Source: Takakia lepidozioides (taxonomy: Eukaryota; Plantae; Bryophyta). Taken from it: a stretch of DNA of 64,000 bases. Of the stretch, positions 3,697 through 51,113 are shown piece after piece. The notes under the pieces are model-generated. The model was not told where the DNA came from. It saw only the letters and a list, made by a program, of their open reading frames with translations, and ran no database searches. Each line of letters opens with the position of its first letter. Position 1 is the stretch's first letter. The DNA lies in NCBI GenBank assembly GCA_030704615.1, contig CM060732.1, positions 28,954,001 to 29,018,000 of the forward strand, in the 5' to 3' direction. Both the position numbers and the translations under genes were made by a program.

Positions 3697-3698
3697 AA

Positions 3699-11944: not shown

Positions 11945-11946
11945 TT

Positions 11947-19177: not shown

Positions 19178-19219
19178 CCCCAAACTAGTTTCGCTCAGCG
19201 CGTGAGCTCATCAGTGGGA
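19178..19219 (-). ncRNA. Minimal type I hammerhead ribozyme, family B
   Basis: Identical to 15250-15291. Confidence 0.88.
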
Positions 19220-19861: not shown

Positions 19862-19909
19862 CCCTCACAAGTTTAGGGTTTAGGGTTTAGGGTTTAGGGT
19901 TTAGGGTTT
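19862..19909 (+). repeat. CCCTCACAAG linker plus (TTTAGGG)5 capping the 5'-truncated family B copy
   Basis: Read directly from the sequence. Confidence 0.95.
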
Positions 19910-20895
19910 GTATCCCCTGCTTTAGATCATTGCATTGTTATGTGCTCTGTGTCTATACGGCATGCCATAAACTCCCTCTCGAGTAGTGCATGGGAGATCT
20001 GCATCTAAGTTGTTCCTAGTGTGTCCATTCTCTTGCAAAACAGAGATAGGGTTCTTATTCTCCTGTGCATCCAGTGAAATAGTTCTCATACGCACATTTG
20101 CCTCTTGCATAGGTTTGCAGTTGCATTTCAGGACACCTCGCATACTTCTATTCTAGTTTCCTGTCTCTCAGGATCTCTCCTTTCAGGTTTGATTCACAGG
20201 ATCTGAAATTTTTCCAGGGGTGCATAACTGGCCCCCCTAAAACTTGTTTGCCCGGATCGTGTTTATCTTGCACCCGGTGCATCCGCGTTGTACTGCTACA
20301 CTTGTTTTGATGCTTTATGTGAACCCTAAACTTTCTTATAGTGTTAGCTGCAACACATCTTTAATCGCCTTCACGTAATGGAGGCAGATGTTGATCTTCA
20401 TTCTTTTGACCAAGCTGCTCATTCATGTGATGAGGCAACAATACGAAGACCGAGCCGTGTTTCTTCTTGGAGGTCGGAAGGTGGGGATCGTGGTTGGTCA
20501 CGTTCAGGACAACACAGCTGCAGGCTTTAGCAAGACGATGGTTGCGCGATGGTCTGCGTGTGCAAAGCTCTTACGAGTTGTGCGTTCCTTTCGAAGTGGT
20601 TTCAGCCCTTACGACTTTGCACAACATGCTCTAACTTCAGCATAATTGGTTGTTGCATAGTCATAACTCACGGAGTTAGTTGTATTTGAGAGATATGCAA
20701 TTGACTATTTGGATGATTTTTATTCTTTGGATCTAGTTCTCTCTTGTCGAGAACTTGTTTTCATCCACTGGATGACTTTCTCCCACCGAGACTTTTTGGA
20801 CTATTCTCTCCGTACGAGACGTCTGTTGGATGGTTTTTCTCCTCACGAGACATCCACTGGAAGATTGTCCACACGAGGCAGTTCACTCCTAGTAG

Positions 20896-20925
20896 TATAT
20901 AAGCGGGGGGTGGGGTTTGTATCTC
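20896..20925 (+). promoter_or_regulatory. TATATAAG and putative start ATCTC of unit C (repeated in each unit)
   Basis: Same arrangement as families A and B, directly upstream of the hammerhead. Confidence 0.55.
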
Positions 20926-20937
20926 ATTCCTTTTCTT

Positions 20938-20979
20938 TCCCACTGATGAGCTCACGCGCTGAGCGAAACTAGTCTGGGG
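20938..20979 (+). ncRNA. Minimal type I hammerhead ribozyme, family C (representative of 19 copies)
   Basis: TCCCA-CTGATGA-GCTCA(CGCGC)TGAGC-GAAA-CTAGTC-TGGGG; canonical GUC triplet, predicted cleavage after 20974. Confidence 0.92.
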
Positions 20980-23900
20980 TCTATAAAGATTTGGCTTCAC
21001 TACTTTGCATGATCTTGCCTCGTGGTCTCACCCTTTGAAGTTGTCGAGTTTTAGATGCGTTTGTATCCCCTGCTTTAGATCATTGCATTGTTATGTGCTC
21101 TGTGTCTATACGGCATGCCATAAACTCCCTCTCGAGTAGTGCATGGGAGATCTGCATCTAAGTTGTTCCTAGTGTGTCCATTCTCTTGCAAAACAGAGAT
21201 AGGGTTCTTATTCTCCTGTGCATCCAGTGAAATAGTTCTCATACGCACATTTGCCTCTTGCATAGGTTTGCAGTTGCATTTCAGGACACCTCGCATACTT
21301 CTATTCTAGTTTCCTGTCTCTCAGGATCTCTCCTTTCAGGTTTGATTCACAGGATCTGAAATTTTCCAGGGGTGCATAACTGGCCCCCCTAAAACTTGTT
21401 TGCCCGGATCGTGTTTATCTTGCACCCGGTGCATCCGCGTTGTACTGCTACACTTGTTTTGACGCTTTATGTGAACCCTAAACTTTCTTACAGTGTTAGC
21501 TGCAACACATCTTTAATCGCCTTCACGTAATGGAGGCAGATGTTGATCTTCATTCTTTTGACCAAGCTGCTCATTCATGTGATGAGGCAACAATACGAAG
21601 ACCGAGCCGTGTTTCGTCTTGGAGGTCGGAAGGTGGGGATCGTGGTTGGACACGTTCAGGACAAACACAGCTGCAGGCTTTAGCAAGACGATGGTTGCGC
21701 GATGGTCTGCGTGTGCAAAGCTCTTACGAGTTGTGCGTTCCTTTCGAAGTGGTTTCAGCCCTTACGACTTTGCACAACATGCTCTAACTTCAGCATAATT
21801 GGTTGTTGCATAGTCATAAACTCACGGAGTTAGTTGTATTTGAGAGATATGCAATTGACTATTTGGATGATTTTTATTCTTTGGATCTAGTTCTCTCTTG
21901 TCGAGAACTTGTTTTCATCCACTGGATGACTTTCTCCCACCGAGACTTTTGGACTATTCTCTCCGTACGAGACATCTGTTGGATGGTTTTTCTCCGCACG
22001 AGACCTCCACTGGAAGATTGTCCACACGAGGCAGTTCACTCCTAGTAGTATATAAGCGGGGGTGGGGTTTGTATCTCATTCCTTTTCTTTCCCACTGATG
22101 AGCTCACGCGCTGAGCGAAACTAGTCTGGGGTCTATAAAGATTTGGCTTCACTACTTTGCATGATCTTGCCTCGTAGTCTCACCCTTTGAAGTTGTCGAG
22201 TTTTAGATGCGTTTGTATCCCCTGCTTTAGATCATTGCATTGTTATGTGCTCTGTGTCTATACGGCATGCCATAAACTCCCTCTCGAGTAGTGCATGGGA
22301 GATCTGCATCTAAGTTGTTCCTAGTGTGTCCATTCTCTTGCAAAACAGAGATAGGGTTCTTATTCTCCTGTGCATCCAGTGAAATAGTTCTCATACGCAC
22401 ATTTGCCTCTTGCATAGGTTTGCAGTTGCATTTCAGGACACCTCGCATACTTCTATTCTAGTTTCCTGTCTCTCAGGATCTCTCCTTTCAGGTTTGATTC
22501 ACAGGATCTGAAATTTTTCCAGGGGTGCATAACTGGCCCCCCTAAAACTTGTTTGCCCGGATCGTGTTTATCTTGCACCCGGTGCATCCGCGTTGTACTG
22601 CTACACTTGTTTTGACGCTTTATGTGAACCCTAAACTTTCTTACAGTGTTAGCTGCAACACATCTTTAATCGCCTTCACGTAATGGAGGCAGATGTTGAT
22701 CTTCATTCTTTTGACCAAGCTGCTCATTCATGTGATGAGGCAACAATACGAAGACCGAGCCGTGTTTCGTCTTGGAGGTCGGAAGGTGGGGATCGTGGTT
22801 GGACACGTTCAGGACAAACACAGCTGCAGGCTTTAGCAAGACGATGGTTGCGCGATGGTCTGCGTGTGCAAAGCTCTTACGAGTTGTGCGTTCCTTTCGA
22901 AGTGGTTTCAGCCCTTACGACTTTGCACAACATGCTCTAACTTCAGCATAATTGGTTGTTGCATAGTCATAAACTCACGGAGTTAGTTGTATTTGAGAGA
23001 TATGCAATTGACTATTTGGATGATTTTTATTCTTTGGATCTAGTTCTCTCTTGTCGAGAACTTGTTTTCATCCACTGGATGACTTTCTCCCACCGAGACT
23101 TTTTGGACTATTCTCTCCGTACGAGACATCTGTTGGATGGTTTTTCTCCGCACGAGACCTCCACTGGAAGATTGTCCACACGAGGCAGTTCACTCCTAGT
23201 AGTATATAAGCGGGGGGTGGGGTTTGTATCTCATTCCTTTTCTTTCCCACTGATGAGCTCACGCGCTGAGCGAAACTAGTCTGGGGTCTATAAAGATTTG
23301 GCTTCACTACTTTGCATGATCTTGCCTCGTAGTCTCACCCTTTGAAGTTGTCGAGTTTTAGATGCGTTTGTATCCCCTGCTTTAGATCATTGCATTGTTA
23401 TGTGCTCTGTGTCTATACGGCATGCCATAAACTCCCTCTCGAGTAGTGCATGGGAGATCTGCATCTAAGTTGTTCCTAGTGTGTCCATTCTCTTGCAAAA
23501 CAGAGATAGGGTTCTTATTCTCCTGTGCATCCAGTGAAATAGTTCTCATACGCACATTTGCCTCTTGCATAGGTTTGCAGTTGCATTTCAGGACACCTCG
23601 CATACTTCTATTCTAGTTTCCTGTCTCTCAGGATCTCTCCTTTCAGGTTTGATTCACAGGATCTGAAATTTTTCCAGGGGTGCATAACTGGCCCCCCTAA
23701 AACTTGTTTGCCCGGATCGTGTTTATCTTGCACCCGGTGCATCCGCGTTGTACTGCTACACTTGTTTTGACGCTTTATGTGAACCCTAAACTTTCTTACA
23801 GTGTTAGCTGCAACACATCTTTAATCGCCTTCACGTAATGGAGGCAGATGTTGATCTTCATTCTTTTGACCAAGCTGCTCATTCATGTGATGAGGCAACA

Positions 23901-25073
23901 ATACGAAGACCGAGCCGTGTTTCGTCTTGGAGGTCGGAAGGTGGGGATCGTGGTTGGTCACGTTCAGGACAACACAGCTGCAGGCTTTAGCAAGACGATG
24001 GTTGCGCGATGGTCTGCGTGTGCAAAGCTCTTACGAGTTGTGCGTTCCTTTCGAAGTGGTTTCAGCCCTTACGACTTTGCACAACATGCTCTAACTTCAG
24101 CATAATTGGTTGTTGCATAGTCATAAACTCACGGAGTTAGTTGTATTTGAGAGATATGCAATCGACTATTTGGATGATTTTTATTCTTTGGATCTAGTTC
24201 TCTCTTGTCGAGAACTTGTTTTCATCCACTGGATGACTTTCTCCCACCGAGACTTTTGGACTATTCTCTCCGTACGAGACATCTCTTGGATGGTTTTTCT
24301 CCTCACGAGACATCCACTGGAAGATTGTCCACACGAGGCAGTTCACTCCTAGTAGTATATAAGCGGGGGGTGGGGTTTGTATCTCATTCCTTTTCTTTCC
24401 CACTGATGAGCTCACGCGCTGAGCGAAACTAGTCTGGGGTCTATAAAGATTTGGCTTCACTACTTTGCATGATCTTGCCTCGTGGTCTCACCCTTTGAAG
24501 TTGTCGAGTTTTAGATGCGTTTGTATCCCCTGCTTTAGATCATTGCATTGTTATGTGCTCTGTGTCTATACGGCATGCCATAAACTCCCTTTCGAGTAGT
24601 GCATGTGAGATCTGCATCTAAGTTGTTCCTAGTGTGTCCATTCTCTTGCAAAACAGAGATAGGGTTCTTATTCTCCTGTGCATCCAGTGAAATAGTTCTC
24701 ATACGCACATTTGCCTCTTGCATAAGTTTGCAGTTGCATTTCAGGACACCTCGCATACTTCTATTCTATGCCATAAACTCCCTTTCAAGTAGTGCATGTG
24801 AGATCTGCATCTAAGTTGTTCCTAGTGTGTCCATTCTCTTGCAAAACAGAGATAGGGTTCTTATTCTCCTGTGCATCCAGTGAAATAGTTCTCTTACGCA
24901 CATTTGCCTCTTGCATAGGTTTGCAGTTGCATTTCAGGACACCTCGCATATTTCTATTCTAGTTTCCAGGGGTGCATAACTGGCCCTCCTAAAACTTGTT
25001 TGCCCGGATCGTGTTTATCTTGCACCCGGTGCATCCGCGTTGTACTGCTACACTTGTTTTGACGCTTTATGTG

Positions 25074-25112
25074 AACCCTAAACCCTAAACCCTAAACCCT
25101 AAACTTGTGAGG
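25074..25112 (+). repeat. (CCCTAAA)4 plus CTTGTGAGG linker inside array 1 (duplicated at 30834-30872)
   Basis: Replaces the segment between AACCCTAAAC and AGGACAACAC of a normal unit. Confidence 0.93.
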
Positions 25113-28100
25113 ACAACACAGCTGCAGGCTTTAGCAAGACGATGGTTGCGCGATGGTCTGCGTGTGCAAAGCTCTTACGAGTTGTGCGTTCCTTTCGAAG
25201 TGGTTTCAGCCCTTACGACTTTGCACAACATGCTCTAACTTCAGCATAATTGGTTGTTGCATAGTCATAAACTCACGGAGTTAGTTGTATTTGAGAGATA
25301 TGCAATTGACTATTTGGATGATTTTTATTCTTTGGATCTAGTTCTCTCTTGTCGAGAACTTGTTTTCATCCACTGGATGACTTTCTCCCACCGAGACTTT
25401 TTGGACTATTCTCTCCGTACGAGACGTCTGTTGGATGGTTTTTCTCCTCACGAGACATCCACTGGAAGATTGTCCACACGAGGCAGTTCACTCCTAGTAG
25501 TATATAAGCGGGGGGTGGGGTTTGTATCTCATTCCTTTTCTTTCCCACTGATGAGCTCACGCGCTGAGCGAAACTAGTCTGGGGTCTATAAAGATTTGGC
25601 TTCACTACTTTGCATGATCTTGCCTCGTGGTCTCACCCTTTGAAGTTGTCGAGTTTTAGATGCGTTTGTATCCCCTGCTTTAGATCATTGCATTGTTATG
25701 TGCTCTGTGTCTATACGGCATGCCATAAACTCCCTTTCGAGTAGTGCATGTGAGATCTGCATCTAATTTGTTCCTAGTGTGTCCATTCTCTTGCAAAACA
25801 GAGATAGGGTTCTTATTCTCCTGTGCATCCAGTGAAATAATTCTCATACGCACATTTGCCTCTTGCATAGGTTTGCAGTTGCATTTCAAGACACCTCGCA
25901 TACTTCTATTCTAGTTTCCTGTCTCTCAGGATCTCTCCTTTCAGGTTTGATTCACAGGATCTGAAATTTTTCCAGGGGTGCATAACTGGCCCCCCTAAAA
26001 CTTGTTTGCCCGGATCGTGTTTATCTTGCACCCGGTGCATCCGCGTTGTACTGCTACACTTGTTTTGATGCTTTATGTGAACCCTAAACTTTCTTATAGT
26101 GTTAGCTGCAACACATCTTTAATCGCCTTCACGTAATGGAGGCAGATGTTGATCTTCATTCTTTTGACCAAGCTGCTCATTCATGTGATGAGGCAACAAT
26201 ACGAAGACCGAGCCGTGTTTCTTCTTGGAGATCGGAAGGTGGGGATCGTGGTTGGTCACGTTCAGGACAACACAGCTGCAGGCTTTAGCAAGACGATGGT
26301 TGCGCGATGGTCTGCGTGTGCAAAGCTCTTACGAGTTGTGTGTTCCTTTCGAAGTGGTTTCAGCCCTTACGACTCTGCACAACATGCTCTAACTTCAGCA
26401 TAATTGGTTGTTGCATAGTCATAAACTCACGGAGTTAGTTGTATTTGAGAGATATGCAATTGACTATTTGGATGATTTTTATTCTTTGGATCTAGTTCTC
26501 TCTTGTCGAGAACTTGTTTTCATCCACTGGATGACTTTCTCCCACCGAGACTTTTTGGACTATTCTCTCCGTACGAGACGTCTGTTGGATGGTTTTTCTC
26601 CTCACGAGACATCCACTGGAAGATTGTCCACACGAGGCAGTTCACTCCTAGTAGTATATAAGCGGGGGGTGGGGTTTGTATCTCATTCCTTTTCTTTCCC
26701 ACTGATGAGCTCACGCGCTGAGCGAAACTAGTCTGGGGTCTATAAAGATTTGGCTTCACTACTTTGCATGATCTTGCCTCGTGGTCTCACCCTTTGAAGT
26801 TGTCGAGTTTTAGATGCGTTTGTATCCCCTGCTTTAGATCATTGCATTGTTATGTGCTCTGTGTCTATACGGCATGCCATAAACTCCCTCTCGAGTAGTG
26901 CATGGGAGATCTGCATCTAAGTTGTTCCTAGTGTGTCCATTCTCTTGCAAAACAGAGATAGGGTTCTTATTCTCCTGTGCATCCAGTGAAATAGTTCTCA
27001 TACGCACATTTGCCTCTTGCATAGGTTTGCAGTTGCATTTCAGGACACCTCGCATACTTCTATTCTAGTTTCCTGTCTCTCAGGATCTCTCCTTTCAGGT
27101 TTGATTCACAGGATCTGAAATTTTCCAGGGGTGCATAACTGGCCCCCCTAAAACTTGTTTGCCCGGATCGTGTTTATCTTGCACCCGGTGCATCCGCGTT
27201 GTACTGCTACACTTGTTTTGATGCTTTATGTGAACCCTAAACTTTCTTATAGTGTTAGCTGCAACACATCTTTAATCGCCTTCACGTAATGGAGGCAGAT
27301 GTTGATCTTCATTCTTTTGACCAAGCTGCTCATTCATGTGATGAGGCAACAATACGAAGACCGAGCCGTGTTTCTTCTTGGAGGTCGGAAGGTGGGGATC
27401 GTGGTTGGTCACGTTCAGGACAACACAGCTGCAGGCTTTAGCAAGACGATGGTTGCGCGATGGTCTGCGTGTGCAAAGCTCTTACGAGTTGTGCGTTCCT
27501 TTCGAAGTGGTTTCAGCCCTTACGACTTTGCACAACATGCTCTAACTTCAGCATAATTGGTTGTTGCATAGTCATAAACTCACGGAGTTAGTTGTATTTG
27601 AGAGATATGCAATTGACTATTTGGATGATTTTTATTCTTTGGATCTAGTTCTCTCTTGTCGAGAACTTGTTTTCATCCACTGGATGACTTTCTCCCACCG
27701 AGACTTTTTGGACTATTCTCTCCGTACGAGACATCTGTTGGATGGTTTTTCTCTCACGAGACCTCCACTGGAAGATTGTCCACACGAGGCAGTTCACTCC
27801 TAGTAGTATATAAGCGGGGGGTGGGGTTTGTATCTCATTCCTTTTCTTTCCCACTGATGAGCTCACGCGCTGAGCGAAACTAGTCTGGGGTCTATAAAGA
27901 TTTGGCTTCACTACTTTGCATGATCTTGCCTCGTAGTCTCACCCTTTGAAGTTGTCGAGTTTTAGATGCGTTTGTATCCCCTGCTTTAGATCATTGCATT
28001 GTTATGTGCTCTGTGTCTATACGGCATGCCATAAACTCCCTCTCGAGTAGTGCATGGGAGATCTGCATCTAAGTTGTTCCTAGTGTGTCCATTCTCTTGC

Positions 28101-31100
28101 AAAACAGAGATAGGGTTCTTATTCTCCTGTGCATCCAGTGAAATAGTTCTCATACGCACATTTGCCTCTTGCATAGGTTTGCAGTTGCATTTCAGGACAC
28201 CTCGCATACTTCTATTCTAGTTTCCTGTCTCTCAGGATCTCTCCTTTCAGGTTTGATTCACAGGATCTGAAATTTTTCCAGGGGTGCATAACTGGCCCCC
28301 CTAAAACTTGTTTGCCCGGATCGTGTTTATCTTGCACCCGGTGCATCCGCGTTGTACTGCTACACTTGTTTTGACGCTTTATGTGAACCCTAAACTTTCT
28401 TACAGTGTTAGCTGCAACACATCTTTAATCGCCTTCACGTAATGGAGGCAGATGTTGATCTTCATTCTTTTGACCAAGCTGCTCATTCATGTGATGAGGC
28501 AACAATACGAAGACCGAGCCGTGTTTCGTCTTGGAGGTCGGAAGGTGGGGATCGTGGTTGGACACGTTCAGGACAAACACAGCTGCAGGCTTTAGCAAGA
28601 CGATGGTTGCGCGATGGTCTGCGTGTGCAAAGCTCTTACGAGTTGTGCGTTCCTTTCGAAGTGGTTTCAGCCCTTACGACTTTGCACAACATGCTCTAAC
28701 TTCAGCATAATTGGTTGTTGCATAGTCATAAACTCACGGAGTTAGTTGTATTTGAGAGATATGCAATTGACTATTTGGATGATTTTTATTCTTTGGATCT
28801 AGTTCTCTCTTGTCGAGAACTTGTTTTCATCCACTGGATGACTTTCTCCCACCGAGACTTTTTGGACTATTCTCTCCGTACGAGACATCTGTTGGATGGT
28901 TTTTCTCCGCACGAGACCTCCACTGGAAGATTGTCCACACGAGGCAGTTCACTCCTAGTAGTATATAAGCGGGGGGTGGGGTTTGTATCTCATTCCTTTT
29001 CTTTCCCACTGATGAGCTCACGCGCTGAGCGAAACTAGTCTGGGGTCTATAAAGATTTGGCTTCACTACTTTGCATGATCTTGCCTCGTAGTCTCACCCT
29101 TTGAAGTTGTCGAGTTTTAGATGCGTTTGTATCCCCTGCTTTAGATCATTGCATTGTTATGTGCTCTGTGTCTATACGGCATGCCATAAACTCCCTCTCG
29201 AGTAGTGCATGGGAGATCTGCATCTAAGTTGTTCCTAGTGTGTCCATTCTCTTGCAAAACAGAGATAGGGTTCTTATTCTCCTGTGCATCCAGTGAAATA
29301 GTTCTCATACGCACATTTGCCTCTTGCATAGGTTTGCAGTTGCATTTCAGGACACCTCGCATACTTCTATTCTAGTTTCCTGTCTCTCAGGATCTCTCCT
29401 TTCAGGTTTGATTCACAGGATCTGAAATTTTTCCAGGGGTGCATAACTGGCCCCCCTAAAACTTGTTTGCCCGGATCGTGTTTATCTTGCACCCGGTGCA
29501 TCCGCGTTGTACTGCTACACTTGTTTTGACGCTTTATGTGAACCCTAAACTTTCTTACAGTGTTAGCTGCAACACATCTTTAATCGCCTTCACGTAATGG
29601 AGGCAGATGTTGATCTTCATTCTTTTGACCAAGCTGCTCATTCATGTGATGAGGCAACAATACGAAGACCGAGCCGTGTTTCGTCTTGGAGGTCGGAAGG
29701 TGGGGATCGTGGTTGGTCACGTTCAGGACAACACAGCTGCAGGCTTTAGCAAGACGATGGTTGCGCGATGGTCTGCGTGTGCAAAGCTCTTACGAGTTGT
29801 GCGTTCCTTTCGAAGTGGTTTCAGCCCTTACGACTTTGCACAACATGCTCTAACTTCAGCATAATTGGTTGTTGCATAGTCATAAACTCACGGAGTTAGT
29901 TGTATTTGAGAGATATGCAATCGACTATTTGGATGATTTTTATTCTTTGGATCTAGTTCTCTCTTGTCGAGAACTTGTTTTCATCCACTGGATGACTTTC
30001 TCCCACCGAGACTTTTTGGACTATTCTCTCCGTACGAGACATCTCTTGGATGGTTTTTCTCCTCACGAGACATCCACTGGAAGATTGTCCACACGAGGCA
30101 GTTCACTCCTAGTAGTATATAAGCGGGGGGTGGGGTTTGTATCTCATTCCTTTTCTTTCCCACTGATGAGCTCACGCGCTGAGCGAAACTAGTCTGGGGT
30201 CTATAAAGATTTGGCTTCACTACTTTGCATGATCTTGCCTCGTGGTCTCACCCTTTGAAGTTGTCGAGTTTTAGATGCGTTTGTATCCCCTGCTTTAGAT
30301 CATTGCATTGTTATGTGCTCTGTGTCTATACGGCATGCCATAAACTCCCTTTCGAGTAGTGCATGTGAGATCTGCATCTAAGTTGTTCCTAGTGTGTCCA
30401 TTCTCTTGCAAAACAGAGATAGGGTTGTTATTCTCCTGTGCATCCAGTGAAATAGTTCTCATACGCACATTTGCCTCTTGCATAAGTTTGCAGTTGCATT
30501 TCAGGACACCTCGCATACTTCTATTCTATGCCATAAACTCCCTTTCAAGTAGTGCATGTGAGATCTGCATCTAAGTTGTTCCTAGTGTGTCCATTCTCTT
30601 GCAAAACAGAGATAGGGTTCTTATTCTCCTGTGCATCCAGTGAAATAGTTCTCTTACGCACATTTGCCTCTTGCATAGGTTTGCAGTTGCATTTCAGGAC
30701 ACCTCGCATATTTCTATTCTAGTTTCCAGGGGTGCATAACTGGCCCTCCTAAAACTTGTTTGCCCGGATCGTGTTTATCTTGCACCCGGTGCATCCGCGT
30801 TGTACTGCTACACTTGTTTTGACGCTTTATGTGAACCCTAAACCCTAAACCCTAAACCCTAAACTTGTGAGGACAACACAGCTGCAGGCTTTAGCAAGAC
30901 GATGGTTGCGCGATGGTCTGCGTGTGCAAAGCTCTTACGAGTTGTGCGTTCCTTTCGAAGTGGTTTCAGCCCTTACGACTTTGCACAACATGCTCTAACT
31001 TCAGCATAATTGGTTGTTGCATAGTCATAAACTCACGGAGTTAGTTGTATTTGAGAGATATGCAATTGACTATTTGGATGATTTTTATTCTTTGGATCTA

Positions 31101-34100
31101 GTTCTCTCTTGTCGAGAACTTGTTTTCATCCACTGGATGACTTTCTCCCACCGAGACTTTTTGGACTATTCTCTCCGTACGAGACGTCTGTTGGATGGTT
31201 TTTCTCCTCACGAGACATCCACTGGAAGATTGTCCACACGAGGCAGTTCACTCCTAGTAGTATATAAGCGGGGGGTGGGGTTTGTATCTCATTCCTTTTC
31301 TTTCCCACTGATGAGCTCACGCGCTGAGCGAAACTAGTCTGGGGTCTATAAAGATTTGGCTTCACTACTTTGCATGATCTTGCCTCGTGGTCTCACCCTT
31401 TGAAGTTGTCGAGTTTTAGATGCGTTTGTATCCCCTGCTTTAGATCATTGCATTGTTATGTGCTCTGTGTCTATACGGCATGCCATAAACTCCCTTTCGA
31501 GTAGTGCATGTGAGATCTGCATCTAAGTTGTTCCTAGTGTGTCCATTCTCTTGCAAAACAGAGATAGGGTTCTTATTCTCCTGTGCATCCAGTGAAATAA
31601 TTCTCATACGCACATTTGCCTCTTGCATAGGTTTGCAGTTGCATTTCAAGACACCTCGCATACTTCTATTCTAGTTTCCTGTCTCTCAGGATCTCTCCTT
31701 TCAGGTTTGATTCACAGGATCTGAAATTTTTCCAGGGGTGCATAACTGGCCCCCCTAAAACTTGTTTGCCCGGATCGTGTTTATCTTGCACCCGGTGCAT
31801 CCGCGTTGTACTGCTACACTTGTTTTGATGCTTTATGTGAACCCTAAACTTTCTTATAGTGTTAGCTGCAACACATCTTTAATCGCCTTCACGTAATGGA
31901 GGCAGATGTTGATCTTCATTCTTTTGACCAAGCTGCTCATTCATGTGATGAGGCAACAATACGAAGACCGAGCCGTGTTTCTTCTTGGAGATCGGAAGGT
32001 GGGGATCGTGGTTGGTCACGTTCAGGACAACACAGCTGCAGGCTTTAGCAAGACGATGGTTGCGCGATGGTCTGCGTGTGCAAAGCTCTTACGAGTTGTG
32101 TGTTCCTTTCGAAGTGGTTTCAGCCCTTACGACTCTGCACAACATGCTCTAACTTCAGCATAATTGGTTGTTGCATAGTCATAAACTCACGGAGTTAGTT
32201 GTATTTGAGAGATATGCAATTGACTATTTGGATGATTTTTATTCTTTGGATCTAGTTCTCTCTTGTCGAGAACTTGTTTTCATCCACTGGATGACTTTCT
32301 CCCACCGAGACTTTTTGGACTATTCTCTCCGTACGAGACGTCTGTTGGATGGTTTTTCTCCTCACGAGACATCCACTGGAAGATTGTCCACACGAGGCAG
32401 TTCACTCCTAGTAGTATATAAGCGGGGGGTGGGGTTTGTATCTCATTCCTTTTCTTTCCCACTGATGAGCTCACGCGCTGAGCGAAACTAGTCTGGGGTC
32501 TATAAAGATTTGGCTTCACTACTTTGCATGATCTTGCCTCGTGGTCTCACCCTTTGAAGTTGTCGAGTTTTAGATGCGTTTGTATCCCCTGCTTTAGATC
32601 ATTGCATTGTTATGTGCTCTGTGTCTATACGGCATGCCATAAACTCCCTCTCGAGTAGTGCATGGGAGATCTGCATCTAAGTTGTTCCTAGTGTGTCCAT
32701 TCTCTTGCAAAACAGAGATAGGGTTCTTATTCTCCTGTGCATCCAGTGAAATAGTTCTCATACGCACATTTGCCTCTTGCATAGGTTTGCAGTTGCATTT
32801 CAGGACACCTCGCATACTTCTATTCTAGTTTCCTGTCTCTCAGGATCTCTCCTTTCAGGTTTGATTCACAGGATCTGAAAATTTTCCAGGGGTGCATAAC
32901 TGGCCCCCCTAAAACTTGTTTGCCCGGATCGTGTTTATCTTGCACCCGGTGCATCCGCGTTGTACTGCTACACTTGTTTTGATGCTTTATGTGAACCCTA
33001 AACTTTCTTATAGTGTTAGCTGCAACACATCTTTAATCGCCTTCACGTAATGGAGGCAGATGTTGATCTTCATTCTTTTGACCAAGCTGCTCATTCATGT
33101 GATGAGGCAACAATACGAAGACCGAGCCGTGTTTCTTCTTGGAGGTCGGAAGGTGGGGATCGTGGTTGGTCACGTTCAGGACAACACAGCTGCAGGCTTT
33201 AGCAAGACGATGGTTGCGCGATGGTCTGCGTGTGCAAAGCTCTTACGAGTTGTGCGTTCCTTTCGAAGTGGTTTCAGCCCTTACGACTTTGCACAACATG
33301 CTCTAACTTCAGCATAATTGGTTGTTGCATAGTCATAAACTCACGGAGTTAGTTGTATTTGAGAGATATGCAATTGACTATTTGGATGATTTTTATTCTT
33401 TGGATCTAGTTCTCTCTTGTCGAGAACTTGTTTTCATCCACTGGATGACTTTCTCCCACCGAGACTTTTTGGACTATTCTCTCCGTACGAGACGTCTGTT
33501 GGATGGTTTTTCTCCTCACGAGACATCCACTGGAAGATTGTCCACACGAGGCAGTTCACTCCTAGTAGTATATAAGCGGGGGGTGGGGTTTGTATCTCAT
33601 TCCTTTTCTTTCCCACTGATGAGCTCACGCGCTGAGCGAAACTAGTCTGGGGTCTATAAAGATTTGGCTTCACTACTTTGCATGATCTTGCCTCGTGGTC
33701 TCACCCTTTGAAGTTGTCGAGTTTTAGATGCGTTTGTATCCCCTGCTTTAGATCATTGCATTGTTATGTGCTCTGTGTCTATACGGCATGCCATAAACTC
33801 CCTCTCGAGTAGTGCATGGGAGATCTGCATCTAAGTTGTTCCTAGTGTGTCCATTCTCTTGCAAAACAGAGATAGGGTTCTTATTCTCCTGTGCATCCAG
33901 TGAAATAGTTCTCATACGCACATTTGCCTCTTGCATAGGTTTGCAGTTGCATTTCAGGACACCTCGCATACTTCTATTCTAGTTTCCTGTCTCTCAGGAT
34001 CTCTCCTTTCAGGTTTGATTCACAGGATCTGAAATTTTTCCAGGGGTGCATAACTGGCCCCCCTAAAACTTGTTTGCCCGGATCGTGTTTATCTTGCACC

Positions 34101-34152
34101 CGGTGCATCCGCGTTGTACTGCTACACTTGTTTTGACGCTTTATGTGAACCC

Positions 34153-34733
34153 ATCTCTTTTCCTTCTCTTTCCCACTGATGAGCTCACGCGCTGAGCGAA
34201 ACTAGTTTGGGGATTATAGAGATTCGCTTTGCTGCATCTTGTGTTCTTGTCTCTTTGTCTCATTGGCGGCGTTGTTGTTGTTGTTGAGTTTTAGATTTGA
34301 TCTTCTGCATAGTTCATTGCATTCATTTGCTTTGTGTCTATTGTAGTGCATGTTTTAAACTCCTTTTCGAGTGTTACATGTTAGATCTCCTTCTAAGACT
34401 GCTCTTTAGTGTGTCTATTCTCTTTCTCAGAGATAGGTTACTATTCTCCTGTCCTTACAGTGAACTAGTTTCATCACACACACTTGCCTCTTGCATATAC
34501 TTGCATTTGCACTTTAGAACGTTGCAACATCACTCCCACTCTGTTCTATTCTAGTTTTGTGTCTCAGGATCGATTCTTTTAGTTTTGATTCACAGGCTAG
34601 ATATTTCTACAAGCTTTCTAAGGTGTCCATAACTGGCCCCCCTAAAAACTTGTTTGCACTTTGCTACTAATGCACCCGGTGCATTCGCGGTTCGAACTCT
34701 GTTGCACTGCTACATGTATTTGTTTCCACTCTT
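34153..34733 (+). mobile_element. Family B pseudo-LTR fragment (with hammerhead) embedded between C units
   Basis: Reverse complement of about 14728-15309. Begins exactly at ATCTC; hammerhead at about 34171-34212. Confidence 0.9.
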
Positions 34734-35303: not shown

Positions 35304-36389
35304 TTCCAACTATTTAATTTGGACCATTGACTAATTAATGCAGTCTTGACTTGGAGGCTAAATTAGTGCTTTAGTGGCATTATTATTGCCTTGGGAATTA
35401 TCCCATATCGTTTGCACATAGTGAGGGTGCTTTTCTAGTATATAAGGATAGGCTTGGCTCTTAGGACTTCATCTCTTGGTGTTCCACTGATGAGCTTGAG
35501 CAATCAAGCGAAACTTGTTTGGAATAAAACACCTTAACTTTTTTTGTGTCTCCACATTTAGAGAAGTCGAGAGTCTAGTCCTTGCCCGCCCGGGCAACTT
35601 GGATCGAAGGGGTGCTCGGCTCCGAGGGGAATCCCAACCCTTGGATACTTCCGAGGCCTTTTTTCTTTCCAAAGCACGGGCGTATAGAGCCTTCCGTTTG
35701 ACGCCATCTTAGCCACCGCTTACAATGGGGAAGGCGGCTGGGGGTATATGGTAATCGTGTCGGGCAAGCTAATTTAGCCCCGACTACACGGTTCCCCCTG
35801 TCGTACGCCCGATGGTCGGAGAGAAGGGATTTGGTTGATCCTCCCTCGAGTTCATCTCGAGCGATCAGAGGACTATGGGCATGCGCAAGCCTGCCGACCT
35901 AACCTTCTCGTCGATGACCTTATGCGGTAATCCCTCCCATTCTTCCTTAGAGGTACGAACCTCTTTTTGAAGGTGGGGCATATAAGTTTTCCAACTAGGG
36001 GTTGAGACTTGACCCTATGTTTGTGAGTGCCTTGAGCGCATGCTTGCCCATAGTGAGCAAGATTTTTGTCGCTAAACAAGGAGAAGCAAACATAAAAAAG
36101 CTTACAGTTGGAACGAAAGTGCCTCATTCTTCAATTAGAGAACCTTATCTCGTGAGGGCGGGAGTCCTTGCATAAGACATAATAGTCTTATTGCATCCCT
36201 TTAGGCACGATAGGCGCACTTTGTATGCATTTGTCTTGGTTTCCATTGCATTTGTATTTGGGTCCGAACCGGCCCCCCTTAATTTTTACTGTGTCTTTTT
36301 CCAGTATTTTTCTACTTTTTGTTACTTTTGCAAGCCTTTGCTAACCACCCTAAACCCTAAACCCTAAACCCCTAAACCCCTAAACCCTA
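35300..36389 (+). mobile_element. 5'-truncated family A copy (pseudo-LTR only; hammerhead 35478-35533) ending in telomeric tract 36347-36389
   Basis: Near-identical to 11769-12820. Confidence 0.92.
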
Positions 36390-40708: not shown

Positions 40709-40710
40709 AT

Positions 40711-41733: not shown

Positions 41734-41754
41734 GTCCCATGTCTTTCATTTCTT

Positions 41755-42450: not shown

Positions 42451-43325
42451 GACCTACAGCTAGTGTATCATGGGGGTGTTTCCTATTTGTTTCCCTTTCC
42501 GCATTCATCTTAGCTACCTTACCATTGATAATTAAGTATCAGTTTGCTTCATCGATCTATCGGTTCCCTCCACTAATCCATTCAATCCACAGCTTCATTC
42601 AGATCTCTCTACACAGTGTGATTGTATCGTATAAGTATCAGATTATGATTTATCAGGTATCAGGCCGAAGCCATTATGTCTCTAATTTGCTCTACAATAT
42701 CACTCTAGCTTTGCATATGACAAGCATCTACTAATCCTCTTTTCTCCTTCATCGTGCTCTCCGATCTCCGCTCCCGCCTGACTCCGAAGTCCTCCCCGAA
42801 TAATGATCCCCTCATCATTCCCCGTTCTTCCCTTTATCCTCCTATCCGCGGTTCTAACCGTTTCCCTCTCTAACCGTCGTATGTGAACTAACATGTTCCC
42901 TTCACAGGTGTTGTTCCCCACAGTCGTTCCCTGTCCTACTCTTCGTTCCCTATTATCGTGACAGCTGTGTCAAGCGGTGACTGGCTGTGTTTGGCTGTGT
43001 CGGGCTGTGACTGGCTGTGTGGCTGTGTCTGCTGTGACGACTGTGACGGGCTGTGTGGGCTGTGTGGGCTGTGACGACTGTGACGGGCTGTGTGGGCTGT
43101 GACGGCTGTGTGGGCTGTGTGGGCTGTGACGACTGTGACGGGCTGTGTGGGCTGTGACTGGCTGTGTGGGCTGTGTCTGCTGTGACGACTATGTGGGCTA
43201 TGTAACCCCCCTCTACAGTGCGCTGCTGTCACCCCTAAGGTTCTTGTTTGTCTCAGTCTGTGCAAAAATTAAGGGTACCCTACAGATCCCGTATAAGTGT
43301 CTAAGTCCCCTACAGTCCTCTAACA
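42343..43325 (-). repeat. 5' LTR of Gypsy copy 2
   Basis: TG...CA termini; homologous to 3699-4829; abuts a C unit. Confidence 0.85.
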
Positions 43326-46300
43326 GGAGTGAACTGCCTCGTGTGGACAATCTTCCAGTGGATGTCTCGTGAGGAGAAAAACCATCCAACAGACGTCTCG
43401 TACGGAGAGAATAGTCCAAAAAGTCTCGGTGGGAGAAAGTCATCCAGTGGATGAAAACAAGTTCTCGACAAGAGAGAACTAGATCCAAAGAATAAAAATC
43501 ATCCAAATAGTCAATTGCATATCTCTCAAATACAACTAACTCCGTGAGTTTATGACTATGCAACAACCAATTATGCTGAAGTTAGAGCATGTTGTGCAAA
43601 GTCGTAAGGGCTGAAACCACTTCGAAAGGAACGCACAACTCGTAAGAGCTTTGCACACGCAGACCATCGCGCAACCATCGTCTTGCTAAAGCCTGCAGCT
43701 GTGTTGTCCTGAACGTGACCAACCACGATCCCCACCTTCCGACCTCCAAGAAGAAACACGGCTCGGTCTTCGTATTGTTGCCTCATCACATGAATGAGCA
43801 GCTTGGTCAAAAGAATGAAGATCAACATCTGCCTCCATTACGTGAAGGCGATTAAAGATGTGTTGCAGCTAACACTATAAGAAAGTTTAGGGTTCACATA
43901 AAGCATCAAAACAAGTGTAGCAGTACAACGCGGATGCACCGGGTGCAAGATAAACACGATCCGGGCAAACAAGTTTTAGGGGGGCCAGTTATGCACCCCT
44001 GGAAAAATTTCAGATCCTGTGAATCAAACCTGAAAGGAGAGATCCTGAGAGACAGGAAACTAGAATAGAAGTATGCGAGGTGTCCTGAAATGCAACTGCA
44101 AACCTATGCAAGAGGCAAATGTGCGTATGAGAACTATTTCACTGGATGCACAGGAGAATAAGAACCCTATCTCTGTTTTGCAAGAGAATGGACACACTAG
44201 GAACAACTTAGATGCAGATCTCCCATGCACTACTCGAGAGGGAGTTTATGGCATGCCGTATAGACACAGAGCACATAACAATGCAATGATCTAAAGCAGG
44301 GGATACAAACGCATCTAAAACTCGACAACTTCAAAGGGTGAGACCACGAGGCAAGATCATGCAAAGTAGTGAAGCCAAATCTTTATAGACCCCAGACTAG
44401 TTTCGCTCAGCGCGTGAGCTCATCAGTGGGAAAGAAAAGGAATGAGATACAAACCCCACCCCCCGCTTATATACTACTAGGAGTGAACTGCCTCGTGTGG
44501 ACAATCTTCCAGTGGATGTCTCGTGAGGAGAAAAACCATCCAACAGACGTCTCGTACGGAGAGAATAGTCCAAAAAGTCTCGGTGGGAGAAAGTCATCCA
44601 GTGGATGAAAACAAGTTCTCGACAAGAGAGAACTAGATCCAAAGAATAAAAATCATCCAAATAGTCAATTGCATATCTCTCAAATACAACTAACTCCGTG
44701 AGTTTATGACTATGCAACAACCAATTATGCTGAAGTTAGAGCATGTTGTGCAAAGTCGTAAGGGCTGAAACCACTTCGAAAGGAACGCACAACTCGTAAG
44801 AGCTTTGCACACGCAGACCATCGCGCAACCATCGTCTTGCTAAAGCCTGCAGCTGTGTTGTCCTGAACGTGACCAACCACGATCCCCACCTTCCGACCTC
44901 CAAGAAGAAACACGGCTCGGTCTTCGTATTGTTGCCTCATCACATGAATGAGCAGCTTGGTCAAAAGAATGAAGATCAACATCTGCCTCCATTACGTGAA
45001 GGCGATTAAAGATGTGTTGCAGCTAACACTATAAGAAAGTTTAGGGTTCACATAAAGCATCAAAACAAGTGTAGCAGTACAACGCGGATGCACCGGGTGC
45101 AAGATAAACACGATCCGGGCAAACAAGTTTTAGGGGGGCCAGTTATGCACCCCTGGAAAAATTTCAGATCCTGTGAATCAAACCTGAAAGGAGAGATCCT
45201 GAGAGACAGGAAACTAGAATAGAAGTATGCGAGGTGTCCTGAAATGCAACTGCAAACCTATGCAAGAGGCAAATGTGCGTATGAGAACTATTTCACTGGA
45301 TGCACAGGAGAATAAGAACCCTATCTCTGTTTTGCAAGAGAATGGACACACTAGGAACAACTTAGATGCAGATCTCCCATGCACTACTCGAGAGGGAGTT
45401 TATGGCATGCCGTATAGACACAGAGCACATAACAATGCAATGATCTAAAGCAGGGGATACAAACGCATCTAAAACTCGACAACTTCAAAGGGTGAGACCA
45501 CGAGGCAAGATCATGCAAAGTAGTGAAGCCAAATCTTTATAGACCCCAGACTAGTTTCGCTCAGCGCGTGAGCTCATCAGTGGGAAAGAAAAGGAATGAG
45601 ATACAAACCCCACCCCCCGCTTATATACTACTAGGAGTGAACTGCCTCGTGTGGACAATCTTCCAGTGGATGTCTCGTGAGGAGAAAAACCATCCAACAG
45701 ACGTCTCGTACGGAGAGAATAGTCCAAAAAGTCTCGGTGGGAGAAAGTCATCCAGTGGATGAAAACAAGTTCTCGACAAGAGAGAACTAGATCCAAAGAA
45801 TAAAAATCATCCAAATAGTCAATTGCATATCTCTCAAATACAACTAACTCCGTGAGTTTATGACTATGCAACAACCAATTATGCTGAAGTTAGAGCATGT
45901 TGTGCAAAGTCGTAAGGGCTGAAACCACTTCGAAAGGAACGCACAACTCGTAAGAGCTTTGCACACGCAGACCATCGCGCAACCATCGTCTTGCTAAAGC
46001 CTGCAGCTGTGTTGTCCTGAACGTGACCAACCACGATCCCCACCTTCCGACCTCCAAGAAGAAACACGGCTCGGTCTTCGTATTGTTGCCTCATCACATG
46101 AATGAGCAGCTTGGTCAAAAGAATGAAGATCAACATCTGCCTCCATTACGTGAAGGCGATTAAAGATGTGTTGCAGCTAACACTATAAGAAAGTTTAGGG
46201 TTCACATAAAGCATCAAAACAAGTGTAGCAGTACAACGCGGATGCACCGGGTGCAAGATAAACACGATCCGGGCAAACAAGTTTTAGGGGGGCCAGTTAT

Positions 46301-47479
46301 GCACCCCTGGAAAAATTTCAGATCCTGTGAATCAAACCTGAAAGGAGAGATCCTGAGAGACAGGAAACTAGAATAGAAGTATGCGAGGTGTCCTGAAATG
46401 CAACTGCAAACCTATGCAAGAGGCAAATGTGCGTATGAGAACTATTTCACTGGATGCACAGGAGAATAAGAACCCTATCTCTGTTTTGCAAGAGAATGGA
46501 CACACTAGGAACAACTTAGATGCAGATCTCCCATGCACTACTCGAGAGGGAGTTTATGGCATGCCGTATAGACACAGAGCACATAACAATGCAATGATCT
46601 AAAGCAGGGGATACAAACGCATCTAAAACTCGACAACTTCAAAGGGTGAGACCACGAGGCAAGATCATGCAAAGTAGTGAAGCCAAATCTTTATAGACCC
46701 CAGACTAGTTTCGCTCAGCGCGTGAGCTCATCAGTGGGAAAGAAAAGGAATGAGATACAAACCCCACCCCCCGCTTATATACTACTAGGAGTGAACTGCC
46801 TCGTGTGGACAATCTTCCAGTGGATGTCTCGTGAGGAGAAAAACCATCCAACAGACGTCTCGTACGGAGAGAATAGTCCAAAAAGTCTCGGTGGGAGAAA
46901 GTCATCCAGTGGATGAAAACAAGTTCTCGACAAGAGAGAACTAGATCCAAAGAATAAAAATCATCCAAATAGTCAATTGCATATCTCTCAAATACAACTA
47001 ACTCCGTGAGTTTATGACTATGCAACAACCAATTATGCTGAAGTTAGAGCATGTTGTGCAAAGTCGTAAGGGCTGAAACCACTTCGAAAGGAACGCACAA
47101 CTCGTAAGAGCTTTGCACACGCAGACCATCGCGCAACCATCGTCTTGCTAAAGCCTGCAGCTGTGTTGTCCTGAACGTGACCAACCACGATCCTCACCTT
47201 CCGACCTCCAAGAAGAAACACGGCTCGGTCTTCGTATTGTTGCCTCATCACATGAATGAGCAGCTTGGTCAAAAGAATGAAGATCAACATCTGCCTCCAT
47301 TACGTGAAGGCGATTAAAGATGTGTTGCAGCTAACACTATAAGAAAGTTTAGGGTTCACATAAAGCATCAAAACAAGTGTAGCAGTACAACGCGGATGCA
47401 CCGGGTGCAAGATAAACACGATCCGGGCAAACAAGTTTTAGGGGGGCCAGTTATGCACCCCTGGAAAAATTTCAGATCC
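43326..47479 (-). mobile_element. Tandem array 2 of derivative C, inverted (about 3.6 units, period 1154)
   Basis: ORF-track offsets 44073/45227/46381; hammerheads near 44400, 45555 and 46710 on minus. Confidence 0.93.
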
Positions 47480-50400
47480 GAGACTTTTTGGACTATTCTC
47501 TCCGTACGAGACATCTGTTGGATGGTTTTTCTCCTCACGAGACATCCACTGGAAGATTGTCCACATGAGGCAGTTCACTCCTAGTAGTATATAAGCGGGG
47601 GGTGGGGTTTGTATCTCATTCCTTTTCTTTCCCACTGATGAGCTCACGCGCTGAGCGAAACTAGTCTGGGGTCTATAAAGATTTGGCTTCACTACTTTGC
47701 ATGATCTTGCCTCGTGGTCTCACCCTTTGAAGTTGTCGAGTTTTAGATGCGTTTGTATCCCCTGCTTTAGATCATTGCATTGTTATGTGCTCTGTGTCTA
47801 TACGGCATGCCATAAACTCCCTTTCGAGTAGTGCATGTGAGATCTGCATCTAAGTTGTTCCTAGTGTGTCCATTCTCTTGCAAAACAGAGATAGGGTTCT
47901 TATTCTCCTGTGCATCCAGTGAAATAGTTCTCATACGCACATTTGTCTCTTGCATAGGTTTGCAGTTGCATTTCAGGACACCTCGCATACTTCTATTCTA
48001 TGCCATAAACTCCCTTTCGAGTAGTGCATGTGAGATCTGCATCTAAGTTGTTCCTAGTGTGTCCATTCTCTTGCAAAACAGAGATAGGGTTCTTATTCTC
48101 CTGTGCATCCAGTGAAATAATTCTCATACGCACATTTGCCTCTTGCATAGGTTTGCAGTTGCATTTCAGGACACCTCGCATACTTCTATTCTAGTTTCCT
48201 GTCTCTCAGGATCTCTCCTTTCAGGTTTGATTCACAGGATCTGAAATTTTTCCAGGGGTGCATAACTCGCCCCCCTAAAACTCGTTTGCCCGGATCGTGT
48301 TTATCTTGCACCCGGTGCATCCGCGTTGTACTGCTACACTTGTTTTGACGCTTTATGTGAACCCTAAACTTTCTTATAGTGTTAGCTGCAACACATCTTT
48401 AATCGCCTTCACGTAATGGAGGCAGATGTTGATCTTCATTCTTTTGACCAAGCTGCTCATTCATGTGATGAGGCAACAATACGAAGACCGAGCCGTGTTT
48501 CGTCTTGGAGGTCGGAAGGTGGGGATCGTGGTTGGACACGTTCAGGACAACACAGCTGCAGGCTTTAGCAAGACGATGGTTGCGCGATGGTCTGCGTGTG
48601 CAAAGCTCTTACGAGTTGTGCGTTCCTTTCGAAGTGGTTTCAGCCCTTACAACTTTGCACAACATGCTCTAACTTCAGCATAATTGGTTGTTGCATAGTC
48701 ATAAACTCACAGAGTTAGTTGTATTTGAGAGATATGCAATTGACTATTTGGATGATTTTTATTCTTTGGATCTAGTTCTCTCTTGTCGAGAACTTGTTTT
48801 CATCCACTGGATGACTTTCTCCCACCGAGACTTTTTGGACTATTCTCTCCGTACGAGACATCTGTTGGATGGTTTTTCTCCTCACGAGACATCCACTGGA
48901 AGATTGTCCACACGAGGCAGTTCACTCCTAGTAGTATATAAGCGGGGGGTGGGTTTGTATCTCATTCCTTTTCTTTCCCACTGATGAGCTCACGCGCTGA
49001 GCGAAACTAGTCTGGGGTCTATAAAGATTTGGCTTCACTACTTTGCATGATCTTGCCTCGTGGTCTCACCCTTTGAAGTTGTCGAGTTTTAGATGCGTTT
49101 GTATCCCCTGCTTTAGATCATTGCATTGTTATGTGCTCTGTGTCTATACGGCATGCCATAAACTCCCTTTCGAGTAGTGCATGTGAGATCTGCATCTAAG
49201 TTGTTCCTAGTGTGTCCATTCTCTTGCAAAACAGAGATAGGGTTCTTATTCTCCTGTGCATCCAGTGAAATAGTTCTCATACGCACATTTGTCTCTTGCA
49301 TAGGTTTGCAGTTGCATTTCAGGACACCTCGCATACTTCTATTCTATGCCATAAACTCCCTTTCGAGTAGTGCATGTGAGATCTGCATCTAAGTTGTTCC
49401 TAGTGTGTCCATTCTCTTGCAAAACAGAGATAGGGTTCTTATTCTCCTGTGCATCCAGTGAAATAATTCTCATACGCACATTTGCCTCTTGCATAGGTTT
49501 GCAGTTGCATTTCAGGACACCTCGCATACTTCTATTCTAGTTTCCTGTCTCTCAGGATCTCTCCTTTCAGGTTTGATTCACAGGATCTGAAATTTTTCCA
49601 GGGGTGCATAACTCGCCCCCCTAAAACTCGTTTGCCCGGATCGTGTTTATCTTGCACCCGGTGCATCCGCGTTGTACTGCTACACTTGTTTTGACGCTTT
49701 ATGTGAACCCTAAACTTTCTTATAGTGTTAGCTGCAACACATCTTTAATCGCCTTCACGTAATGGAGGCAGATGTTGATCTTCATTCTTTTGACCAAGCT
49801 GCTCATTCATGTGATGAGGCAACAATACGAAGACCGAGCCGTGTTTCGTCTTGGAGGTCGGAAGGTGGGGATCGTGGTTGGACACGTTCAGGACAACACA
49901 GCTGCAGGCTTTAGCAAGACGATGGTTGCGCGATGGTCTGCGTGTGCAAAGCTCTTACGAGTTGTGCGTTCCTTTCGAAGTGGTTTCAGCCCTTACAACT
50001 TTGCACAACATGCTCTAACTTCAGCATAATTGGTTGTTGCATAGTCATAAACTCACAGAGTTAGTTGTATTTGAGAGATATGCAATTGACTATTTGGATG
50101 ATTTTTATTCTTTGGATCTAGTTCTCTCTTGTCGAGAACTTGTTTTCATCCACTGGATGACTTTCTCCCACCGAGACTTTTTGGACTATTCTCTCCGTAC
50201 GAGACATCTGTTGGATGGTTTTTCTCCTCACGAGACATCCACTGGAAGATTGTCCACACGAGGCAGTTCACTCCTAGTAGTATATAAGCGGGGGGTGGGG
50301 TTTGTATCTCATTCCTTTTCTTTCCCACTGATGAGCTCACGCGCTGAGCGAAACTAGTCTGGGGTCTATAAAGATTTGGCTTCACTACTTTGCATGATCT

Positions 50401-51076
50401 TGCCTCGTGGTCTCACCCTTTGAAGTTGTCGAGTTTTAGATGCGTTTGTATCCCCTGCTTTAGATCATTGCATTGTTATGTGCTCTGTGTCTATACGGCA
50501 TGCCATAAACTCCCTTTCGAGTAGTGCATGTGAGATCTGCATCTAAGTTGTTCCTAGTGTGTCCATTCTCTTGCAAAACAGAGATAGGGTTCTTATTCTC
50601 CTGTGCATCCAGTGAAATAGTTCTCATACGCACATTTGTCTCTTGCATAGGTTTGCAGTTGCATTTCAGGACACCTCGCATACTTCTATTCTATGCCATA
50701 AACTCCCTTTCGAGTAGTGCATGTGAGATCTGCATCTAAGTTGTTCCTAGTGTGTCCATTCTCTTGCAAAACAGAGATAGGGTTCTTATTCTCCTGTGCA
50801 TCCAGTGAAATAATTCTCATACGCACATTTGCCTCTTGCATAGGTTTGCAGTTGCATTTCAGGACACCTCGCATACTTCTATTCTAGTTTCCTGTCTCTC
50901 AGGATCTCTCCTTTCAGGTTTGATTCACAGGATCTGAAATTTTTCCAAGGGTGCATAACTCGCCCCCCTAAAACTCGTTTGCCCGGATCGTGTTTATCTT
51001 GCACCCGGTGCATCCGCGTTGTACTGCTACACTTGTTTTGACGCTTTATGTGAACCCTAAACCCTAAACCCTAAAC
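47478..51076 (+). mobile_element. Tandem array 3 of derivative C (1346-1347-bp units with a 193-bp internal duplication), ending in (CCCTAAA)3
   Basis: Offsets 47767/49113/50460; hammerheads near 47634, 48981 and 50328. Confidence 0.93.
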
Positions 51077-51113
51077 TTGGATGGTGCTTTCTCGTATTAC
51101 GTACCGTTGGAGC

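What the first reader, a model, noticed from the sequence alone, without database searches (positions are those of the whole stretch)
19862..51080. Recurrent non-telomeric linker CCCTAAAC-TTGTGAGGG at healed ends: footprint of the templating RNA
Four independent junctions with unrelated targets fit the same string on the C-rich strand: 19862-19871 (minus; overlap GGG with B RT), 25104-25112 (overlap AGG with C; duplicated at 30864), 35294-35303 (overlap AGGG with A) and 51076-51079 (overlap CTTG with A RT). The native targets lack TTGTG, and B and C continue differently after their own ACCCTAAAC. Inference: broken 3' ends annealed by 3-4 nt to an RNA reading CCCUAAACUUGUGAGGG, copied the spacer, and then added repeats. 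That RNA may be the host telomerase RNA (sequence 3' of its template) or an unseen PLE RNA end, including the part of family A not visible here.
Basis: partly seen in the sequence, partly recalled or inferred. Interest (0 to 1): 0.85.

Follow-up and report, generated by a model that had tools for sequence, protein, structure and literature searches.

The report
RNA-copied scar at healed DNA ends
In a plant's stack of telomere-seeking retroelements, newly added telomere repeats repeatedly begin with the same few foreign letters, most likely copied from the telomerase RNA just beyond its normal template; a similar trace is known in mouse, but I could not confirm the source RNA here.

Summary
Three independent junctions, each on a different target (B reverse transcriptase, C unit, A 3'UTR), carry the same non-native TTGTG between telomere repeats and a 5'-truncated Penelope-like element (PLE), followed by a 3-4 nt overlap in the same register. 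Chance is about 2e-6 for the core. The fourth junction (51076) has no inserted base, only a 4-nt overlap, so it is weak support. Three other caps lack the linker.

Best reading (0.68): telomerase anneals a CCC/CCT 3' end to a G-run just 3' of its RNA template, copies the spacer, then adds repeats. C, B and A RNAs fit poorly as the source, but an unseen element is not excluded, and B has an unexplained near-match. I could not reach the telomerase RNA gene, so the decisive test is undone. Precedent: mouse interstitial telomeres (PMC2246262). I found no plant report. This scan noted the same linker, and a candidate telomerase RNA gene, on other pieces of this genome (unchecked notes).

The parts
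19862..19871 (-). Junction J1: 6 inserted nt plus GGG overlap with 5'-truncated B reverse transcriptase
19872..19906 (-). Five telomere repeats capping J1, fused head-to-head to a truncated C unit
25076..25103 (+). Four telomere repeats capping J2; a C variant (193-nt duplication, 54-nt deletion) is attached to them
25104..25112 (+). Junction J2: TTGTG inserted plus AGG overlap with 5'-truncated C
30836..30872 (+). Duplicate of the J2 cap and junction (5760-nt tandem duplication); not an independent event
35273..35293 (+). Three telomere repeats capping J3
35294..35303 (+). Junction J3: TTGTG inserted plus AGGG overlap with 5'-truncated A 3'UTR (native copy at 11769)
51055..51079 (+). Three repeats plus junction J4: no inserted base, CTTG overlap with a 40-nt A fragment
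12817..12841 (+). Cap without linker on a break in B; ordinary overlap with the repeat itself
36348..36389 (+). Cap without linker on a break in the Gypsy pol gene; contains two 8-nt repeat units
51115..51215 (-). Degenerate telomere tract without linker on the other end of the 40-nt A fragment
10053..12816 (+). Family A PLE: frameshifted reverse transcriptase, no endonuclease, 3'UTR with hammerhead core near 11950; 5' part lost in the N gap
12838..19864 (-). Family B PLE tandem: truncated RT end and 3'UTR, full ORF1 and RT, 3'UTR, second ORF1 broken at 12838
15691..15709 (-). Internal near-match of the junction string in B coding sequence (codons LNPKLHEG); second copy ending at 19638
19906..35272 (+). 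Family C non-coding 1.15-kb units with TATA, hammerhead core (20925-20998) and a single terminal telomeric stretch; one B 3'UTR piece at 34153-34734
35300..36347 (+). A 3'UTR piece, the target of J3
43325..51054 (.). Further C units, minus strand to 47478 and then plus strand up to the J4 cap
51216..52266 (-). A 3'UTR pieces; their 3' ends carry no linker

Best explanation
The scar is a telomerase footprint. A PLE reverse transcriptase stops early, or DNA breaks, leaving a G-strand 3' end that ends in CCC or CCT and so cannot pair with the template. It pairs instead with a G-run lying 5-6 nt 3' of the template in the host telomerase RNA. Telomerase copies the spacer, runs into the template and adds 3-5 ordinary repeats, and the next PLE primes on those repeats. 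Ends that already finish in GGG use the normal template and leave no linker. SHOWN: shared inserted bases, in-register overlaps, unrelated targets, variable repeat numbers, absence of the string from the visible A, B and C elements. INFERRED: that the template was RNA, that it was the telomerase RNA, and that TERT was the enzyme.
For: Three unrelated targets share the core and register. The spacer runs without a gap into the repeat phase and is followed by 3-5 repeats, as processive telomerase would give. C stretches continue natively with one other sequence and B with another. The four A 3' ends lack the linker. The C variants above J2, J3 and J4 differ. J4 fits the same RNA with a shorter offset, and the 8-nt units at 36362-36385 fit copying of the last template base (inference). 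Mouse precedent: 8 of 14 TERC-ITS loci carry bases complementary to the RNA just 3' of the template (PMC2246262). In bryophyte telomerase RNA the pseudoknot lies 3' of the template and has a short G/C-rich P2 stem (PMC8287931), so a G-run there is plausible. EN-minus PLEs are known to attach to telomere overhangs (PMC8557442).
Against: The telomerase RNA gene of this organism was not seen. No published bryophyte telomerase RNA sequence could be read. The metagenome scan gave only 13 chance-like hits. Only three strong events are available. The PLE enzyme itself switches template on 4-5 nt overlaps in this array (34730). B carries a two-edit near-match (about 0.02 by chance over five native stretches).
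Confidence: 0.68

Rival explanations
1. The source is the telomerase RNA, but the PLE reverse transcriptase copies it: on leaving its own RNA it jumps to the G-run of the telomerase RNA, copies the spacer and one repeat, and telomerase or slippage adds the rest.
For: J1-J3 all lie at PLE 5'-truncation points. Template switches on short overlaps occur here (34730, 52094). PLE and telomerase enzymes are sister groups.
Against: It needs the free RNA to be available to a foreign enzyme. Several repeats follow every linker. J4 lies at a sense-strand break, not a cDNA end.
Confidence: 0.12
2. The source is an unseen PLE or passenger RNA whose telomeric stretch is followed by these bases, such as the missing part of family A or a B variant.
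For: A's native continuation is hidden by the N gap. B's internal stretch differs by only two edits. Related PLEs carry telomere-like codons at this place.
Against: The donor's upstream sequence never follows the linker: C ends or a fusion follow instead. All four A 3' ends lack it. Read in frame, the string would replace the His that usually follows LNP(K/T)L in homologs; none shows Val. Three identical copying errors from B are implausible.
Confidence: 0.13
3. One ancestral junction was spread by read-through transcripts or recombination, landing on new targets by its terminal AGGG.
For: J2 was duplicated once.
Against: The three C copies are different variants, repeat numbers differ, and J1 has no C 3' end above it. 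The first event would still need a source.
Confidence: 0.05
4. Chance untemplated additions or assembly error.
For: The number of events is small, the assembly shows frameshifts in A and B, and no reads were laid.
Against: About 2e-6 for the core alone. Homopolymer-type errors do not create the same 5-mer at three unrelated sites.
Confidence: 0.02

Closest known systems
Mouse TERC-ITS loci (Nergadze et al. 2007, PMC2246262)
   Same: Telomere repeats at a repaired break are preceded by a few bases complementary to the telomerase RNA immediately 3' of the template (8 of 14 loci); breaks show microhomology.
   Different: The mouse loci also contain a 31-118 nt inverted piece of the RNA's 3' domain, and the flank bases sit in the middle of the insert. 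Here the linker joins the break directly, the register is fixed at a G-run, the targets are retroelement ends, and 3 of 7 caps have it.
Ordinary chromosome healing by telomerase
   Same: Repeats are added to a non-telomeric end using 1-5 nt of overlap; seen here at 12838 and probably 36385.
   Different: In ordinary healing the overlap is with the repeat itself and no foreign bases are added.
Endonuclease-deficient PLEs (Athena and Coprina clades; PMC8557442 citing Gladyshev and Arkhipova 2007)
   Same: Reverse transcriptase without GIY-YIG, telomeric stretch plus hammerhead motif, head-to-tail truncated copies capped by repeats.
   Different: This stack is interstitial with alternating polarity. 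I found no description of a recurring non-telomeric linker under the caps, but the two primary papers were not held.
Plant telomerase RNA genes (Fajkus et al. 2019, 2021; PMC6765143, PMC8287931)
   Same: The inferred RNA has one repeat plus at least one extra base, followed by a short spacer and a G-run.
   Different: No gene is in this window; only a 9-nt inferred flank is.

Membership tests
Telomerase healing with copying of RNA 3' of the template (TERC-ITS-like) | Telomere repeats joined to a non-telomeric end | tested here: met
Telomerase healing with copying of RNA 3' of the template (TERC-ITS-like) | Non-native bases between end and repeats, recurring at independent sites | tested here: met
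   three sites, about 2e-6
Telomerase healing with copying of RNA 3' of the template (TERC-ITS-like) | Microhomology of the broken end to the copied RNA | tested here: met
   3-4 nt in one register, relative to the inferred string
Telomerase healing with copying of RNA 3' of the template (TERC-ITS-like) | The extra bases equal the organism's telomerase RNA 3' of its template | not testable with these tools
   Gene not in the window; no published sequence readable; metagenome scan blank
Mouse TERC-ITS in the strict sense | Inverted 31-118 nt piece of the RNA's 3' domain beside the repeats | tested here: not met
   Only 5-6 foreign bases lie between target and repeats
Endonuclease-deficient PLE (host array) | PLE-type reverse transcriptase with no GIY-YIG domain | tested here: met
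   YIDD motif; frame ends about 27 residues after LNPKL; closest homologs carry PF28514 and PF26215 without GIY-YIG. Assignment to PLEs rests on architecture, not on a named profile hit.
Endonuclease-deficient PLE (host array) | Short reverse-complement telomeric stretch with nearby hammerhead motif | tested here: met
   Stretch in B and C; hammerhead cores in C and A, below Rfam gathering score
Endonuclease-deficient PLE (host array) | Location at or near a chromosome end | tested here: not met
   The same piece extends at least 1.49 Mb before and 8.39 Mb after the window (distances printed)
Endonuclease-deficient PLE (host array) | Placement in the Athena or Coprina clade by a tree | not tested
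   No named reference sequences were on hand

The most novel reading that the evidence does not exclude
A retroelement reverse transcriptase, not TERT, jumps onto the host telomerase RNA at a fixed G-run and so starts the capping of its own cDNA end, preparing the landing site for the next copy.
Probability: 0.12. Interest if true: 0.85.

Novelty: new variant of a known kind. Interest (0 to 1): 0.5.

Why it matters
If the source is the telomerase RNA, the scars show in vivo that a plant telomerase often grips non-telomeric ends through a second pairing site outside its template, which widens the set of breaks it can heal. They would record telomerase and a retroelement enzyme taking turns on the same DNA end. 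They would also give a way to read the template flank of a telomerase RNA straight from an assembly, which helps to find these poorly conserved genes. The basic phenomenon is already known from mouse.

Tried and rejected

Metagenome scan: 13 hits, 11 inside long reading frames, none followed up as a promoter-bearing RNA gene. Rfam at gathering score: nothing. Viral contigs: no PLE relative. Full-text search for the string: one unrelated hit. Telomerase RNA tables were illegible or not held. Song 2019, Bozdechova 2024, Gladyshev 2007 and Arkhipova 2017 were not held. PDB gave no relative of the enzyme. Top named PLE hits are Cryptomeria, Selaginella and Ginkgo-style gene ids, and the closest named Gypsy hits by identity are Riccia. 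Rejected as sources: C, B terminal stretches and A 3' ends. The duplicate at 30864 was rejected as independent evidence.
Full report
SETTING. Between about 10050 and 52270 the window holds a stack of three retroelement families separated by short tracts of the plant-type 7-nt telomere repeat. Family B has an ORF1 and a reverse transcriptase with a YIDD motif and no endonuclease; its closest named relatives are from Cryptomeria and Selaginella, at about 45% identity. Family A is a second such enzyme, 44% identical to B over 207 residues, and its 5' part is lost in an N gap. Family C is a non-coding 1.15-kb unit whose 3' region is about 72% identical to that of B. Hammerhead cores are present in A and C, below Rfam's gathering score. 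This is the architecture described for endonuclease-deficient Penelope-like elements, which attach to telomere overhangs through a short complementary stretch (PMC8557442). The site is interstitial: the same piece runs at least 1.49 Mb before and 8.39 Mb after the window. The host is a plant, possibly a bryophyte (Gypsy relatives from Riccia; unchecked notes say moss); it was not named.

THE OBSERVATION. I compared each cap with an uncapped copy of its target (for J3 the copy at 11769). J1 (19862-19871, minus) has six bases foreign to B and then GGG shared with B. J2 (25104-25112) has five foreign bases and then AGG shared with C. J3 (35294-35303) has the same five foreign bases and then AGGG shared with A. 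All three read as the last repeat base, TTGTG, then AGG(G). The copy at 30864 lies in a 5760-nt duplication and is not independent. The chance that two further junctions repeat the 5-nt core is 2e-6. The chance that three truncation points begin with a fitting 3-mer is 1.7e-5, or about 2e-4 on a stricter count of J2 and J3 only. Three other caps have no linker. At 12838 the end overlaps the repeat itself. At 36385 a broken Gypsy pol probably does the same, but no native copy is in the window. At 51115 the tract is degenerate. The score is 3 of 7 caps with the full linker and 1 with a fitting overlap.

INDEPENDENCE. The targets are unrelated and the repeat numbers are 5, 4, 3 and 3. The C copies above J2, J3 and J4 are three different variants: duplication plus deletion, plain, and duplication with private substitutions. 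J1 has no element 3' end above it at all. One read-through transcript cannot explain them.

WHICH RNA. Uncapped C stretches all continue with one other sequence, and B's terminal stretch continues into its ORF1. A's continuation is unseen. However, copying from A RNA would put the A 3'UTR directly above the linker, which never happens, and the four A 3' ends (12816, 36347, 51216, 52094) lack the linker. Its first half is explained by the conserved LNP(K/T)LH motif. Read in that frame the linker would put Val where homologs mostly have His. The second half stays unexplained and keeps the 'unseen element' rival alive. Telomerase RNA needs no extra assumption: the spacer is continuous with the repeat phase, several repeats follow, and mouse shows the same trace. 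There, 8 of 14 TERC-ITS loci carry bases complementary to the RNA just 3' of the template (PMC2246262). Bryophyte telomerase RNAs have a short G/C-rich pseudoknot stem 3' of the template (PMC8287931), which makes a G-run plausible but does not prove it. The inferred 17-mer can also fold into a 4-bp hairpin of -2.8 kcal/mol that closes the template. A closed template state is reported for Physcomitrium RNA (PMC12133305), but I could not read which bases pair there.

MECHANISM. Shown: foreign bases, register, independence, and absence from the visible elements. Inferred: a 3' end finishing in CCC or CCT pairs with the G-run, the enzyme copies the spacer into the template and adds repeats, and the next element primes on them. 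Ends finishing in GGG use the template directly. Sequence alone cannot say whether TERT or the element's own enzyme does the copying. Template switches on 4-5 nt overlaps do occur in this array, but multi-repeat caps and the fit of J4 at a sense-strand break favour TERT.

ELSEWHERE. Related elements from other organisms share the layout. In one metagenome-derived family, one cap is ordinary (L025, overlap with the repeat) and one has a few non-native bases before a native GG (L020). This is a single case and only suggestive. Unchecked notes of this scan report the same linker on another piece (s1-481617), footprints at five of nine patches (s1-472841) and a candidate telomerase RNA gene (s1-472962). 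I could not read those sequences and do not count them as support; they show where the decisive test can be made.

LIMITS. The metagenome scan gave only chance-like hits, and no bryophyte telomerase RNA sequence was readable in the papers held.

VERDICT. The feature is real and templated, most likely a telomerase RNA footprint (0.68 with TERT, 0.80 including the PLE-enzyme rival). It is a new variant of a known kind: known in mouse, not found reported in plants or at PLE ends in the papers I could search. Interest 0.5.

Noticed in passing
window 12838-19864, 36390-47478, 51076-51114: Three pieces are extended outward from both ends, and growing stacks are fused head-to-head at 19906 and 47478. 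This suggests repeated breakage, healing and joining rather than one fossil chromosome end.
   Followed up: partly
window 15691-15709 and 19620-19638 (minus): The B coding region has a telomere-like stretch two edits from the junction string. Homologs from Selaginella and others also encode this motif with telomere-like codons.
   Followed up: partly
window 36362-36385 and 51115-51215: Variant telomere units: 8-nt units with an extra G, and units with six T. These may be misaligned priming, or assembly error.
   Followed up: partly
window 34153, 34730, 52094: Element-to-element joins without a telomere cap, on 0-5 nt overlaps; probable template switches.
   Followed up: partly
window 36380-43325 and 1-4829: Two copies of a Gypsy LTR element. 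One inserted into a C unit at 43325 and was later broken in its integrase region and capped.
   Followed up: partly
window 20897-20998: A TATA-like box lies directly upstream of a minimal hammerhead core in each C unit; a similar layout is seen in B.
   Followed up: partly
window 5656-7344: Two divergent, inverted frames about 63% identical at DNA level (5696-6484 minus; 6742-7351 plus); function not examined.
   Followed up: no
window 7598-8310: Dispersed repeats of a short palindromic motif, as at the end of a DNA transposon.
   Followed up: no
window 53516-54154: A frame resembling the C-terminal zinc-binding end of a LINE (by eye, not tested).
   Followed up: no
L020 1-70; L025 1-70: In another organism's PLE family one cap has a few non-native bases before a native GG, and another cap is ordinary.
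   Followed up: partly
L014 6464-6715 and 13913-14070 (Selaginella moellendorffii): PLE ends and one telomere tract contain recurring CG and CGCG variant units; these could be native element sequence or an analogous footprint.
   Followed up: partly
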